Source of the DNA: Calcarisporiella thermophila CBS 279.70 | Lineage: Eukaryota > Fungi > Calcarisporiellomycota | Reading direction: 5' to 3' | Length of the DNA stretch: 64,000 nucleotides | Assembly: GCF_041956535.1 (NCBI RefSeq) | Contig: NW_027192196.1 | Span: 737,823 to 801,822, forward strand | In this document: positions 45,132 through 63,222 of the stretch, piece after piece | How positions within the stretch are numbered: the stretch's first letter is position 1 | Layout of the letters: each line of letters opens with the position of its first letter | Notes under the pieces: model-generated | Seen by the model: the letters and a program-made list of their open reading frames with translations, nothing else | Database searches by the model: none | What the model was told of the DNA's origin: nothing | Program-made: the position numbers and the translations under genes

Positions 45132-45839
45132 TTCACTCAATTTATGCAGTTTGTAAAAGTAGTTGGTTTACTGAGGCCCCTCCCTCCCATAAAATTCGAT
45201 GAAAGAACGAAAAATCTCGTGAATCATCAAATTGCACAAGGTTTTTCCTCGGTTAGAGATATAAGGAAATTTGCCTTATTGAATTAGATATTATATAGGA
45301 GCACGAAGACTAATTGGGCACAGACTCTTATCCTAGTTTGGATCAATGACCAAGTTTACCCCGCGTTCCTTATTTAAGAATATCAAACTTAATCTGAAAG
45401 ATTCAACAGAAGTAGGTACTATAGCTATCGGTAGAGATAAGAATTTCTGCCAATATATATGATCAAATAGTTATATATCCAATGCCTCAACGCCAACTGG
45501 CTATTAACATAAGACACGTGTTTGGGACTACATCAACAAAACTTTCAAAATGCTTTGCCAAATAATTGTAAGTTCATATACTTTCATATACGTCCATTAT
45601 TAGTCGTATTAAAGGATACAAGTTTTATTGAATTTGCAATGGTAGGCAGAATTATGTAATATAAACCATCGTTATAGTGATTATCGTATTCGTTTTTGTT
45701 TGCCTAAATATACTCGTTCTGGAATATAAGTGCAATAAAAATATTTAGTATCACAGTATTCCATGTGGCCAATAAAATTTCTATATATTTATTGTTTTAT
45801 GTCAAAACAGAGGTATATCTATATGTTTATTCAAATTTG

Positions 45840-51428: not shown

Positions 51429-54400
51429 ATGTCAGTTTCCAAGTTAGACTCGTTAGGAAATGATGTCCAAAGTATACAACTTAAATCAAGGTATATTCAA
51501 TGATATATCTGCTTTATATTCAATGAATTTAATCCAGAGTTTAATATAAACCAATGTGGGATTTAGCTTTGTATCAGTAAGGACTATAGAATCAATCTAC
51601 AGCGGGGGAAAAGTTTCTATAATACAAGGATCCGATAAAGAATATGGGGGCGATTTACTGATAGCAACAGTCGGAGAGGATATTAATATAATTGAACTCG
51701 AAAGTGGGTTACAGAAATTCAGATTAAAAGGGGTAGTTATTTATTATTTTAATTTTCAAATTGTGATATATTTACAATATAATGGCTTTACAAAGGATAC
51801 AGAGATAATTACTACTTTTGCAGCTAAACCTAATGGCAAGCATCTTGTCTCCGCAAGTCGAAGTCTTGTTATAAAAATTTGGGATTTATTGACTGGTCAG
51901 ATTATTCGAAGCTTCAAGGTGAGTGAACTGCACTAGCATATTAAATATATTTCCTTATTTATTGACGTAAATAATTCATCTCAATTCTGTAATAGGCTCA
52001 CGATGCACCAGTCATAGCCATGGATATAGATTCGACATCCACTCTGGTGGCAACAGGTTCAGCAGATAGTACTGTAAAAGTATGGGATATAGACCGAGGT
52101 TATTGCACACACAATTTCAAGGGACATGGAGGAGTAGTAAGTGCTGTGCGATTTCATCCTGATAAGAAGCGGTGGATGCTCGTATCTGGGGCAGACGATT
52201 GCCAAATTCGCCTCTGGGATTTACAAAAACGATCTTGTCTCGCAGTCCTAGAGAGCCATGTAAGCGTCATCCGTGGTCTCGATTTCACCAATGATGGAAA
52301 TCGCCTTGTTAGCGGCTCTCGTGACAAGGTGGTAAATGTGTGGGATCTACAGGATTATAAATTAATAAACACGTTTCCAGTCTATGAGGTGAGTTAATAT
52401 TCTTTGTTTTTTAATTTCTTGATATAAAGTCTAATGGGCTTTTTATATAGACTCTAGAAACGGTTGGTGTACTGGAGAATGGCATATCTGTTAATAATGA
52501 CGGAACAAACCAAGAGCTCTTTTACACCGGCGGAGAGAAAGGAGTTGTGCGTATCTGGGATTTGAAGAGTGGTAAACTAGTCCAATCAGAGAAAGATGAC
52601 AAGGCGACGAGATACATTAATGACATTGTGTAAGAGATATTAACGAAATTATATTGATTTTAGCAAGTAATAATATTAATACAATTTTCGCATAATAGTT
52701 ATCTGAGGCACAAACGATGCATGGCAGTCGTGACCAGTGACCAAAACATCTTATTCTATAACTTGGACGAACAATTGAGCTGTACTAAGCAGGTTGTAGG
52801 CTATAATGATGAAATCATCGATGCTGCTTATATAGGTAGTGAAGAGCAGCATCTTGCACTGGCCACTAACAGTGAGCAAATACGAGTATTTCACCTTGAA
52901 AAATACGACTGTGACCTCGTACTTGGTCACACAGATATAGTCCTATGCTTGGATCGGACTCGTGATGGGACAATGCTCGCTTCAGGCTCGAAAGATCGTA
53001 CTGCGCGGTTATGGGCGATTAATATCGATGCTCAAGAGCGAGAAAAGCGCTATCGATGTTTGGCAGTATGCGTTGGTCATACTGAGGCTATAAGCGCAAT
53101 TGCTTTACCGAAAAAAAGCAACTCCTTTATACTTACCGCTAGCCAAGATCATACTGTGAAATGCTGGGATATATCCAATATTGGTATTTATTTGAGTTTT
53201 GATATTATAAATATTATAAATTTCAAATCACTGACACTTTTACTTTTTGATTTCTTAGATAAAGGAAAAGAGGATCTTCGCCCCCGAGCACTATATACAC
53301 TAAAAGCGCATGAGAAAGATATCAATTCTATTTGCGTGGCCCCAAATGACAAATTGTTTGCAACCGGTTCTCAAGACAAAACCGCTAAAATATGGTCAAG
53401 AGAAAATGGTCAATTATTGGGTACATGTCATGGCCATAAACGAGGAGTGTGGTGTGTTCAGTTTTCTCCTATCGACAAAGTATTAGCCACAAGCTCCGGA
53501 GATAAAACAATTCGCATCTGGAGTCTCAATGATTTTAGTTGTTTGAAGGTATTAACTGCAATATTATCTCTCATTTATTGTATATATACTAATTACAAAT
53601 ACGTTTATCAAATAATATGTAAAGACATTCGAAGGGCATACCAATTCTGTGCTTAAAGTCTCATTCATCTCTGCCGGAATGCAGCTTATGTCCTGTGGAT
53701 CTGATGGCTTAGTTAAGCTTTGGACAATTAAAACAAGCGAGTGTAACAATACCCTTGATAATCACACAGAAAAGGTCAGTATATCTAAATTAATATTCAA
53801 TGAAAACATTTAACTAACGCCATCAATGACGTCTAGATATGGGCAATGGCGATTCGAAAAGACGAGAAAATGGTAGTAACAGGGGGTGCGGACTCCGTTG
53901 TAAATTTTTGGGAGGATCGAACCAAACAAGAGCAAGAGCAAGAGCTGAAAGAGAAAGAAGAAAAAATTTTAATGTAAAATAATGCTTTATTTGTCCACTT
54001 TCCAGCTAATTAACATCTTTTATTGAATATATTCTATAGGGAGCAGGATTTGGCCAACTACTTACTCAAAAAAGACTATCGTAATGCAATCGCCCTTGCC
54101 ATGTCATTGAATCAACCATATCGCCTTTTAGGCTTGTTTACTGAGCTTTTAAACAATGTGCATAAAGCAGCGAATAGCATTGATGCACAGCAAGATTGTA
54201 TAACTGGATCGCAAGAATTGGATGAGATTCTCTCAGTCTTAACAAAAGAGCAAATTGAAAAATTATTAGAATATGTGCGTGACTGGAACACTAATTCAAA
54301 GCACTCTCGGGTGGCTCAGACAATTCTTTACGCATTATTACATACATATTCTTCTGATCAACTTGTTGAAATTTCCGGGTTTAAAGAGGTGAGCAGTTTA

Positions 54401-61742: not shown

Positions 61743-62593
61743 TCATTGGAATATTTGTGGAAATAGCTTCCTTAGCTTGGAAGCTTCGGTTGCCATATCT
61801 TCTTGGCTCCGAGGGTGGCGGTATTCGTCGTCCATCTTCACGCGCTCTAGCTCATGATATATATCGTCATTTCTTGCAAAATCATTTTTACGTCTCGGGA
61901 GAATATGAATGTGCACATGGGGGACCTATTTTACAATTGCTATTACTTTCGAATTATCCAGTGAATATAATAATAACCTACTGTTTGTCCAGCTGCGTAC
62001 CCATCCTATAGCCATAAATGTATTCAGTATAACATTCTCTTAACACTTATATATTACACGAGTGACCAACCTGAATCGCAAATGTTAATGATTCTGCATT
62101 ATATTCTTTCTCTATTACTTTGGCAACTGTTTGAGCTGAAACCCACAAATCAGATACCTTTAATCCATAAGCGTAATGCGAGCGTTAAATATACTGCGCT
62201 TTAATGAAAAAAAAATAATGAACAGACCTCTTCCGAGGACAATTCCGTAAAACGAGGTACCACACGTCTCGAAATTACTAGTACATCTAAAGTGTAAGTG
62301 CGTTAAGGAATATTCAGAAAAATTACAGTCAATCTGTAAAATTAACAGAGCCAAAAGGATACGACCCCTGACAACAATAGATCGAAAAAAATCAGCTATT
62401 ATTATGGTGCAAAAACAAAAAAAAACTGACTCACGGGACAATGGGCTTTAGATTAACTAGTCCAAGAGAGAGCTGCAGATATATGTATTATTATAACTGT
62501 TTTAGTAATTAATGCATTATTGCCACTTACTTTACTCTGATAAAACACTTCACTCTTGCGTATAACATGTGGTCCGAAAGAATAGGTAGACAT
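61743..62593 (-). CDS. HNT2: Fhit-branch HIT protein (Ap3A/Ap4A hydrolase)
   Basis: FGPH..VFYQSKLSLGLVNLKPIVPGHVLV, QDGYAAGQTVPHVHIHILPR, RTPPPSEPRRYGN region replaced in frame by ..MATEASKLR C-terminus; possible alternative ATG at 62599. Confidence 0.92.
62287..62362 (-). other. U12-type (minor spliceosome) GT-AG intron
   Basis: 5' splice site GTATCCTTTT; branch site TTCCTTAAC 15 nt before the AG end; no long polypyrimidine tract. Confidence 0.92.
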
Positions 62594-63222
62594 TCTCATT
62601 AAATTCATTGTATTTATCGTAAAACCGATTTGGCTAATCTACTAATTTAAATTGGCGCAGTTTAATATTCGATTTATTATAAAGGGTTGATTACTTTGTC
62701 TATTAGACCGAGAATAGTATTAAATAAGTACATTTGTACTAATAGTGAACCTACTGTAAGAATATACACATTCAAAAGGTCTATCCGACAAGGGCTATCT
62801 AAATATTATTATTTTTTGCTAAGTAAATATATAACCAACCCTAGCGCTATATCAAATGCATGGGTAGTGTTGATAATATTTTTCTATCTGTTGTAACACT
62901 CTTCATCAATACTTTAATGTTAGAGGCGCGTATATAAGAAAATAATCGTTTCTCAGTATGCTTTAAATATTTTGGATTTTCTACACTGTTCTGAGGCACT
63001 ATAGAATTTGCCTTATCGATTTAGATTCGGATTCAGATTATTCCTGCTTGAGCTACTTTCCTAATCTTGGAATTTTCCCATTTTCTCTAGGGACTATTTT
63101 TGCAAAGCGGGGATCCTTTTAAGTTGTAAGTATGTATCATCTAAAAGAATAAGATTACGCAAATTTCATGAACATTTCATCTCTTGGATTTTTTTCAGCT
63201 TTTTATATAACGATATAACTAT

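What the first reader, a model, noticed from the sequence alone, without database searches (positions are those of the whole stretch)
62287..62367. Textbook U12-type minor intron next to a 5-nt micro-exon in the FHIT/HNT2 gene
Seen: on the minus strand the conserved PIVPGHVLV motif can only be built as ..GTC CC | G GGT C | AT GTA. This needs a 5-nt exon (62363-62367) between an ordinary U2 intron (GTGAGT..CAG) and a 76-nt intron that starts GTATCCTTTT and has a perfect TTCCTTAAC branch site 15 nt before its end. It is the only donor with this signature among those I read in the window. Known: these are the U11/U12 consensus signals; Dikarya lost the minor spliceosome while some early-diverging fungi keep it. 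From memory, and needing a check, human FHIT has a U12-type intron at the same Gly-His phase-1 position, which would make this an ancient opisthokont intron. Inference: the organism has a working minor spliceosome, and major and minor spliceosomes must act 5 nt apart, so splicing is probably ordered and may be rate-limiting.
Basis: partly seen in the sequence, partly recalled or inferred. Interest (0 to 1): 0.8.

Follow-up and report, generated by a model that had tools for sequence, protein, structure and literature searches.

The report
U12 intron beside 5-nt FHIT micro-exon
In this fungus the single-copy FHIT gene can only make its conserved Pro-Gly-His motif by splicing in a 5-base exon that sits between an ordinary intron and a rare minor-spliceosome (U12-type) intron; that intron lies at the same spot as in animal FHIT genes (and in one plant-like genome), and the tiny exon is shared with distant fungi.

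Summary
On the minus strand, a 7-exon, single-copy FHIT gene (61743-62593) needs the 5-nt exon GGGTC (62363-62367). A 67-nt GT-AG intron lies upstream. Downstream lies a 76-nt intron that starts GTATCCTTTT and has TTCCTTAAC 15 nt before its AG.

The genome carries single U11, U12, U4atac and U6atac candidates and the minor-spliceosome proteins 59K and 25K. It also shows a 6-fold excess of U12 donor-plus-branch pairs.

The intron sits in the same His codon (C|AT) as the U12 intron listed for human and mouse FHIT. I read U12 signals directly at that position in a sea star, another invertebrate, Entomophthora muscae and a plant-like genome.

The 5-nt exon is also present in E. muscae, the chytrid Polyrhizophydium stewartii and a third fungus. 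In the last two the downstream intron has become U2-type. The plant-like gene has a 3-nt exon there instead. Public gene models break at this junction.

No RNA evidence could be obtained, so splicing order and kinetics remain inference. Other first-stage notes flag U12 introns elsewhere in this genome.

Verdict: real, and a new variant of a known kind.

The parts
62531..62593 (-). FHIT exon 1 (MSTYSFGPH...QSK). Further in-frame ATGs lie at 62599 and 62608.
   Evidence: The start was chosen by similarity to the MSQFRFGPH start in L007.
62473..62530 (-). Intron 1, U2-type, GTAAGT...CAG, 58 nt, phase 0
62435..62472 (-). Exon 2 (LSLGLVNLKPIV plus CC), 38 nt
62368..62434 (-). Intron 2, U2-type, GTGAGT...CTGAT...GTCAG, 67 nt, phase 2 in the Pro codon
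62363..62367 (-). 5-nt micro-exon GGGTC: third base of Pro, the Gly codon, first base of His
   Evidence: Counterparts are AGGTC, TGGCC and CGGAC in L007, L015 and L016.
62287..62362 (-). Intron 3, U12-type GT-AG, 76 nt, phase 1 in the His codon
   Evidence: Same position as the animal FHIT U12 intron.
62353..62362 (-). U12-type 5' splice site GTATCCTTTT
   Evidence: Predicted duplex with the U11 5' end is -8.4 kcal/mol.
62302..62310 (-). U12-type branch site TTCCTTAAC; 15 nt follow it to the end of the intron
   Evidence: It pairs with the GUAAGGA box of the U12 candidate.
62228..62286 (-). Exon 4 (AT plus VLVISRRVVPRFTELSSEE), 59 nt
62158..62227 (-). Intron 4, U2-type, GTCTGT...AAG, 70 nt
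62071..62157 (-). Exon 5 (VSDLW...TFAIQ), 87 nt
62006..62070 (-). Intron 5, U2-type, 65 nt
61982..62005 (-). Exon 6 (DGYAAGQT), 24 nt
61926..61981 (-). Intron 6, U2-type, 56 nt
61743..61925 (-). Exon 7 with the histidine triad HVHIHI, including the stop codon
   Evidence: matches human FHIT residues 92-146, E 5e-12; the only copy in the genome.

Best explanation
This is the single FHIT (bis(5'-adenosyl)-triphosphatase, yeast Hnt2/Aph1) gene of an early-diverging fungus. Its conserved Pro-Gly-His is encoded across a constitutive 5-nt micro-exon. The 67-nt intron upstream is removed by the major (U2-type) spliceosome. The 76-nt intron downstream is removed by the minor spliceosome: the U11 5' end pairs with GTATCCTTTT, the U12 GUAAGGA box pairs with TTCCTTAAC, and U4atac/U6atac.U5 carries out catalysis. 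The U12 intron is ancestral. It is shared with animals and probably with plants. The upstream U2 intron that creates the micro-exon dates to early fungi. Inferred, not shown: only 5 nt separate the upstream AG from the U12 donor, so the two spliceosomes cannot be fully assembled there at once and the introns are removed one after the other. By analogy with plant micro-exons, the downstream U12 intron most likely goes first, fusing GGGTC to the 59-nt exon 4. Skipping the micro-exon or retaining the U12 intron shifts the frame into a TGA at the third codon of exon 5 (read). FHIT output would therefore depend on minor-spliceosome activity.
For: Sequence anatomy and frame arithmetic. It is the only U12-like site in the window. 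FHIT identity. Single copy. snRNA candidates, one locus each: U11 scores 53.1 bits (cut-off 39) and U6atac 47.6 bits (cut-off 33); U12 scores 44.4 and U4atac 42.9, both below the 53-bit cut-off but at E 2e-6 and 6e-5. They carry AAAAAGGGC, GUAAGGA and Sm sites. U4atac 1-25 and U6atac 26-60 form an 18-bp duplex of -32.9 kcal/mol, with both strands changed relative to the Rfam consensus. Proteins: PDCD7/59K at 33.9 bits (cut-off 27) and the SNRNP25 Ubl domain at 38.9 and 27.5 bits (cut-off 22.8). Genome-wide, RTATCCTT followed 46-76 nt later by TCCTTRAC occurs 24 times against 4 for the reversed pattern. Orthology: human and mouse FHIT are listed as minor-intron genes with GAC| and GCC|GTATCCTTT. 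The sea star L006 has GGC C|GTATCCTTTT...TTCCTTGAC...AAG|AT. The invertebrate L008 shows the same arrangement. Entomophthora muscae L007 has the same 5-nt exon plus a U12 intron. P. stewartii L015 and the fungus L016 keep the 5-nt exon with wobble changes (GGT, GGT, GGC, GGA), which indicates coding selection. Literature for splicing order: in plants, introns upstream of micro-exons are the ones detained and downstream-first is usual (PMC8831610).
Against: U12 and U4atac score below Rfam's gathering cut-off. The U12 candidate is only 100 nt long. At the homologous position the U6atac candidate reads GUCGA where the consensus has AAGGA, the box that pairs with the donor. The zf-U11-48K domain was not found. 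With a short gap of 15-45 nt, the donor-plus-branch pattern is no more frequent than a scrambled control (7 against 6). TTAAC is one base from the fungal U2 branch consensus, so the branch motif alone does not exclude U2 use. Splicing order and rate are pure inference.
Confidence: 0.85

Rival explanations
1. Intron 3 looks like a U12 intron but is in fact removed by the major spliceosome: a hybrid or relic intron on its way to U2-type.
For: Two fungi, L015 and L016, have a plain U2-type intron at this exact position, so conversion does happen in this gene. TTAAC resembles a U2 branch site. The 5' splice-site box of U6atac is divergent.
Against: The donor has C at +5 and +6, where every other intron of this gene has G or T. 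The full GTATCCTTT donor is kept from human to fungus, which only U11/U6atac pairing would explain. The genome keeps all four minor snRNA candidates and two minor-specific proteins.
Confidence: 0.06
2. The micro-exon is regulated rather than constitutive. A large share of transcripts skip it or retain the U12 intron and run into the TGA in exon 5, so the arrangement works as an expression valve.
For: Both errors lead to the same premature stop (read). Coupling of U11 binding to an upstream U2-type 3' splice site is a known regulatory device in SNRNP48 and RNPC3 (PMC8329584).
Against: Nothing here measures isoforms. The gene is single copy. The micro-exon is under coding selection in four fungi, which requires that the productive form be made.
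Confidence: 0.15
3. The locus is a decaying pseudogene and the 5-nt exon is a coincidence.
For: None beyond the oddity of the structure.
Against: All seven exons are open and in frame, the histidine triad is intact, and this is the only FHIT copy. An AG-NGGNC-GT site is expected about once per 16,000 positions, yet exactly one is found in each of four fungal loci of 96-210 nt.
Confidence: 0.02

Closest known systems
U12-type intron of human and mouse FHIT (Minor Intron Database; Olthof et al. 2019, PMC6717393)
   Same: Same gene, same codon and same phase (Gly, then C|AT of His). Same GT-AG subtype and the same GTATCCTTT donor.
   Different: The human intron is 522,707 nt and this one is 76 nt. 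In the sea star L006 and the invertebrate L008 the Pro-Gly-C bases run straight on from the preceding coding exon with no intron in the Pro codon, so there is no micro-exon. I did not fetch the human locus.
Minor introns of early-diverging fungi (Rhizophagus irregularis 205, Basidiobolus meristosporus 249, Rhizopus, Phycomyces; PMC10639083, PMC2846911)
   Same: A fungus outside the Dikarya with U12-type introns, the four minor snRNAs, and introns shared with animals.
   Different: Those surveys rely on annotated introns. Public FHIT models break at this junction, so this intron would probably be missed. No micro-exon context came up in the passages of those surveys that I searched.
Ultra-short conserved micro-exons of plants (Yu et al. 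2022, PMC8831610)
   Same: A 1-15 nt coding exon inside a conserved domain. It is missed by annotation and conserved over long times, with the downstream intron tending to go first.
   Different: That paper does not mention U12, AT-AC or FHIT. Here one flank is a minor-spliceosome intron, and the case is fungal.
U11 snRNP-binding splicing enhancer (USSE) of SNRNP48 and RNPC3 (reviewed in PMC8329584)
   Same: A U12-type 5' splice-site sequence lies close downstream of a U2-type 3' splice site, which implies cross-talk between the two spliceosomes.
   Different: The USSE is not spliced and acts through exon definition at a conserved distance that is under selection. Here the donor is a real splice site only 5 nt from the AG, in a genome of short introns where intron definition is expected.

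Membership tests
U12-type (minor) intron | 5' splice site RTATCCTTT directly at the exon boundary | tested here: met
   GTATCCTTTT at 62362-62353
U12-type (minor) intron | Branch site TCCTTAAC close to the 3' end (roughly 8-35 nt), with no strong polypyrimidine tract | tested here: met
   TTCCTTAAC at 62310-62302, followed by 15 nt ending in the only AG. 9 of those 15 bases are pyrimidines but there is no T-run.
U12-type (minor) intron | The genome encodes U11, U12, U4atac and U6atac | tested here: met
   U11 and U6atac score above Rfam's cut-off. U12 and U4atac score below it, but they have the recognition boxes, Sm sites and a co-varying U4atac/U6atac stem.
U12-type (minor) intron | The genome encodes minor-spliceosome-specific proteins | tested here: inconclusive
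   PDCD7/59K and the SNRNP25 Ubl domain score above their cut-offs. The zf-U11-48K domain was not found. 65K, 35K, 31K, 20K and ZRSR2 were not searched.
U12-type (minor) intron | Positional homology with an accepted U12 intron | tested here: met
   Human and mouse FHIT in the MIDB table. Sea star and another invertebrate read directly.
U12-type (minor) intron | Removal depends on the minor spliceosome | not testable with these tools
   Needs RNA data or snRNA knock-down.
Constitutive coding micro-exon | Canonical splice sites on both sides, and restoration of the frame and of a conserved motif | tested here: met
   CAG|GGGTC|GT. It gives PGH and a 459-nt open frame, and it is the only such candidate in the 148-nt gap.
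Constitutive coding micro-exon | Conserved in orthologues with synonymous variation | tested here: met
   AGGTC (E. muscae), TGGCC (P. stewartii), CGGAC (L016)
Constitutive coding micro-exon | Junction reads in RNA | not testable with these tools
FHIT branch of the HIT superfamily | Histidine triad HxHxHxx and a FHIT-type C-terminal helix | tested here: met
   Exon 7 carries HVHIHIL and matches human FHIT residues 92-146 at E 5e-12, with NitFhit also hit. Pfam HIT scores only 14.7 bits on this single exon.
FHIT branch of the HIT superfamily | Ap3A hydrolase activity | not tested
   Needs an enzyme assay

The most novel reading that the evidence does not exclude
An ultra-short exon directly 5' of the ancient FHIT U12 intron may be a selected, recurrent architecture rather than an accident. 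It is 5 nt in fungi since before chytrids and zygomycetes split, and 3 nt (next to an AT-AC U12 intron) in a streptophyte-like genome, with upstream introns that differ in position by 2 nt. U12 donors need no exonic pairing, so they tolerate such exons. U11/U12 bound to the donor may define the micro-exon and license the upstream U2 3' splice site, much as a USSE does. That would hard-wire FHIT output to minor-spliceosome activity.
Probability: 0.25. Interest if true: 0.75.

Novelty: new variant of a known kind. Interest (0 to 1): 0.6.

Why it matters
Minor introns in early fungi and the U12 intron of human FHIT are both already on record. Three things are not. First, here the minor and major spliceosomes must work 5 nt apart on an essential coding micro-exon. 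Second, this arrangement has been kept across fungal phyla, with two independent U12-to-U2 conversions that leave the micro-exon intact. Third, a plant-like genome shows a parallel 3-nt version.

This gives a natural, compact substrate of about 150 nt for asking how the two spliceosomes share a transcript, in what order they act, and whether U12 donors favour micro-exons.

It also has a practical side. Public FHIT models in several genomes are wrong at exactly this junction, so annotation-based counts of minor introns miss cases like this one.

Tried and rejected
- A paper search for FHIT plus 'U12-type' found nothing. FHIT plus U12 plus intron gave only irrelevant hits. The answer came from the supplementary tables of Olthof 2019.
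- A gathering-threshold Rfam scan of the window gave no hits.
- Pfam on single exons is weak or blank because the pieces are short.
- The zf-U11-48K domain was not found in the genome.
- The strict donor-plus-branch pattern with a 15-45 nt gap is not enriched over a scrambled branch motif (7 against 6). Only the 46-76 nt gap shows an excess.
- The other two GTATCCTTT sites in the window (45611 and 51792) have no branch motif and were dropped.
- P0001, P0041 and P0107 are not on record, so their loci could not be read.
- L009-L014 are intronless or metagenomic and say nothing about this intron.
- Assemblies GCA_025603075.1, GCA_053525275.1 and GCA_037126225.1 could not be tied to a named species.
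- A single 148-nt intron from 62434 to 62287 was rejected: it shifts the frame and ends at a TGA in exon 5.
- Read-through of intron 3 was rejected: it loses the His and shifts the frame.
Exons were searched one at a time by reference. No human contig was fetched or compared.

Full report
**1. What is in the sequence**

- On the minus strand, window 61743-62593 holds a seven-exon gene.
- The exons are 63, 38, 5, 59, 87, 24 and 183 nt. They sum to 459 nt, which is 152 codons plus a stop.
- Exon 2 ends GTC CC at 62435.
- Intron 2 (62434-62368, 67 nt) is GTGAGT...CTGAT...GTCAG.
- Exon 3 is GGGTC (62367-62363).
- Intron 3 (62362-62287, 76 nt) starts GTATCCTTTT. It carries TTCCTTAAC at 62310-62302 and ends 15 nt later in its only AG.
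- Exon 4 starts AT GTA at 62286.
- A search of the 148-nt gap for AG-NGGNC-GT finds this one site only.
- Removing the whole 148 nt as one intron, or retaining intron 3, shifts the frame into a TGA at the third codon of exon 5.
- The other five introns are plain GT-AG introns of 56-70 nt with G or T at +5 and +6.
- I checked the frame by translating each exon separately and by arithmetic.

**2. Is it more than chance?**

- GTATCCTTT occurs three times in the window (0.73 expected) and TTCCTTAAC once (0.75 expected).
- Only the FHIT site has a donor, a branch motif and a terminal AG/AC at the right spacing.
- The two other donor-like sites (45611, 51792) have no branch motif.

**3. The gene**

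- Exon 7 matches human FHIT residues 92-146 (E 5e-12) and the NitFhit fusion protein. It carries the triad HVHIHI.
- It is the only copy in the 28.2-Mb assembly, so there is no intron-free backup.

**4. Does the organism have a minor spliceosome?**

| Component | Score | Cut-off | Note |
|---|---|---|---|
| U11 | 53.1 bits | 39 | begins AAAAAGGGC |
| U6atac | 47.6 bits | 33 | |
| U12 | 44.4 bits | 53 | E 2e-6; has GAGUAAGGA and an Sm site |
| U4atac | 42.9 bits | 53 | E 6e-5; ends AAUUUUUGGAA |
| PDCD7 (59K) | 33.9 bits | 27 | |
| SNRNP25 Ubl domain | 38.9 and 27.5 bits | 22.8 | on two adjacent exons |
| zf-U11-48K | not found | | 25-position domain |

- Each snRNA candidate is a single locus in the genome.
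- U4atac 1-25 and U6atac 26-60 form an 18-bp helix of -32.9 kcal/mol, and both strands differ from the Rfam consensus. That is the behaviour expected of a working pair.
- Genome-wide, RTATCCTT followed 46-76 nt later by TCCTTRAC occurs 24 times against 4 for the reversed pattern. About two thirds of the hits start ATATCC.
- With a 15-45 nt gap there is no excess over a scrambled control.
- Sixteen first-stage notes flag U12 introns elsewhere in this genome. They are leads, and the pattern search agrees with them.
- The literature already places minor introns in early-diverging fungi: Rhizophagus 205, Basidiobolus 249, with none convincing in Dikarya (PMC10639083).

**5. Conservation of the intron**

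- Supplementary tables of Olthof et al. 2019 (PMC6717393) list FHIT as a minor-intron gene in both human and mouse.
- The human donor is GAC|GTATCCTTT with branch GCCTTAAC. The intron is chr3:60014153-60536859.
- The mouse donor is GCC|GTATCCTTT with branch TCCTTAAC.
- The three exonic bases fit GG(A/C) C|, that is Gly followed by the first base of His.
- That this is Gly34-His35 also rests on the PGH in the solved human protein and on my memory of the cDNA. I fetched no human DNA.
- A vertebrate-like mis-model (P0018) reads ...NRKPVVPGRIL. This is what CCN GGN C|GTATCCTT gives when the intron is read through.

Loci I read directly:

| Locus | Organism | What is at the His codon |
|---|---|---|
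| L006 | sea star Asterias amurensis (GCA_032118995) | CCT GGC C\|GTATCCTTTT...TTCCTTGAC...CTAAG\|AT GTC |
| L008 | invertebrate with a Nit gene next door | GGT C\|GTATCCTTCC...GCCTTAAC, then 12 nt ending CAG\|AT ATT |
| L019 | nearest Atlas cluster is Streptophyta | AT-AC U12 intron ATATCCTTTT...TACCTTGAC, then 9 nt ending AC\|AT GTG |

The intron is therefore at least as old as opisthokonts and probably older. The plant-like evidence is one genome of unverified identity.

**6. Conservation of the micro-exon**

| Locus | Organism | Structure | Downstream intron |
|---|---|---|---|
| window | this fungus | GTC CC\|GTGAGT...CAG\|GGGTC\|GTATCCTTTT | U12, 76 nt |
| L007 | Entomophthora muscae (GCA_014839935.2) | GTT CC\|GTAAGA...TTTAG\|AGGTC\|GTATCCTTTT...ATCCTTGAC...ACAG\|AT GTT | U12, 112 nt |
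| L015 | chytrid Polyrhizophydium stewartii (GCA_027604665) | GTG CC\|GTGCGT...ACAG\|TGGCC\|GTGGGT...ACAG\|AC GTC | U2-type |
| L016 | a third, AT-rich fungus | AAA CG\|GTAGTG...ATAG\|CGGAC\|GTAAGA...TTAG\|AT GTC | U2-type |

- Each locus has exactly one AG-NGGNC-GT candidate.
- The variable positions are the wobble bases (GGT, GGT, GGC, GGA) and the last base of the preceding codon. That is the signature of coding selection.
- The upstream intron, and with it the micro-exon, therefore predates the split of chytrids from zygomycete lineages.
- The U12 intron was converted to U2-type at least twice without disturbing the micro-exon.
- The animal loci read here have no micro-exon.
- The plant-like locus has CCT G|GTACTT...TTGCAG|GTC|ATATCC. 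This is a 3-nt exon whose upstream intron lies 2 nt further downstream than the fungal one.

**7. Annotation**

Public models fail at this junction.

- P0002 (E. muscae) and P0060 fuse an upstream gene onto ...HVLV.
- P0055 retains intron sequence.
- P0001, P0016 and P0031 have invented N-termini.
- P0018 and P0030 read through as GRIL.

Annotation-based minor-intron surveys will miss such cases.

**8. How it most likely works**

*Shown:* the signals, the machinery genes, and the orthology.

*Inferred:*
- Introns of this size are recognised by intron definition.
- The U11/U12 di-snRNP binds the donor and the branch site of intron 3. U12 donors need no exonic pairing, which is what makes a 5-nt upstream exon tolerable.
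- The upstream AG and the U12 donor are 5 nt apart, so two assembled spliceosomes cannot occupy the site together. Removal must therefore be sequential.
- In plants, introns upstream of micro-exons are the detained ones and downstream-first is the usual order (PMC8831610). By analogy I put about 55-60% on the U12 intron going first.
- Known cross-talk between U11 binding and an upstream U2 3' splice site (the USSE; PMC8329584) is the nearest mechanistic precedent, but it acts at a longer distance.
- 'Rate-limiting' remains untested.

**9. Limits**

- There is no RNA evidence.
- U12 and U4atac score below Rfam's curated cut-off.
- At the aligned position the U6atac candidate reads GUCGA where the consensus has the donor-pairing AAGGA. 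This is unexplained.
- The identity of the window's organism is withheld.
- Three comparison assemblies could not be named.

**10. Verdict**

- The U12 intron itself is a new member of a well-known kind.
- What is new is its conserved abutment to a 5-nt micro-exon (3 nt in the plant-like genome), and the U12-to-U2 conversions around an unchanged micro-exon. I did not find this described in the literature searches run here.
- Interest 0.6.

Noticed in passing
L019:1100-2745 (GCA_037126225.1, nearest Atlas cluster Streptophyta): The plant-like FHIT gene has a 3-nt micro-exon GTC (1810-1812) between a U2 intron (CCT G|GTACTT...TTGCAG) and a 927-nt AT-AC U12 intron (ATATCCTTTT...TACCTTGAC, then 9 nt ending AC). 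The U12 intron is at the same His-codon position as in the fungus. The annotated protein P0147 is wrong here.
   Followed up: partly
L015:1599-1808 and L016:1867-1962: In Polyrhizophydium stewartii and an unnamed AT-rich fungus the 5-nt micro-exon is kept (TGGCC, CGGAC), but the downstream intron is U2-type (GTGGGT, GTAAGA). These look like U12-to-U2 conversions. L016 also has Arg in place of the Pro before Gly-His.
   Followed up: partly
L004:1501-1633 (G000:C2:193832-193964): The U6atac candidate keeps GAGAGA and the U4atac-pairing stem. Where the consensus has AAGGA, the box that pairs with UCCUU of the donor, it reads GUCGA. Either the pairing register differs in this fungus or the covariance-model alignment is off.
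   Followed up: partly
L002:1501-1700 and L001:1501-1600: The U11 candidate is 200 nt long (the model is 134) with large insertions, and has 63% G+C in a 38% G+C genome. The U12 candidate is only 100 nt (the model is 151) and lacks most of the 3' stem-loop.
   Followed up: no
P0002/L007, P0060/L016, P0055/L015, P0031/L008, P0018, P0030: Public FHIT gene models break at the Gly-His junction. Some are fused to an upstream gene, some have an invented N-terminus, and some read through the U12 donor as the tell-tale peptide G-R-I-L.
   Followed up: yes
L008:1-1860: A CN_hydrolase (Nit) gene lies directly upstream of FHIT in this invertebrate. This probably reflects a NitFhit fusion that the annotation split at the U12 intron.
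   Followed up: no
window 45611-45619 and 51792-51800, minus strand: Two further exact GTATCCTTT matches have no branch motif within reach and no obvious exon context. They are probably chance matches.
   Followed up: partly
window 62599 and 62608, minus strand: Two more in-frame ATGs lie just upstream of the likely start (MNLMRMSTY...). The true start codon is not settled.
   Followed up: no
G000, 24 sites listed: About two thirds of the strict U12-like donor-plus-branch pairs begin ATATCC rather than GTATCC. This matches earlier notes that the genome is biased toward AT-AC introns. Two hits (C3:1026020 and C12:67225) look like paralogous coding sequence rather than introns.
   Followed up: no
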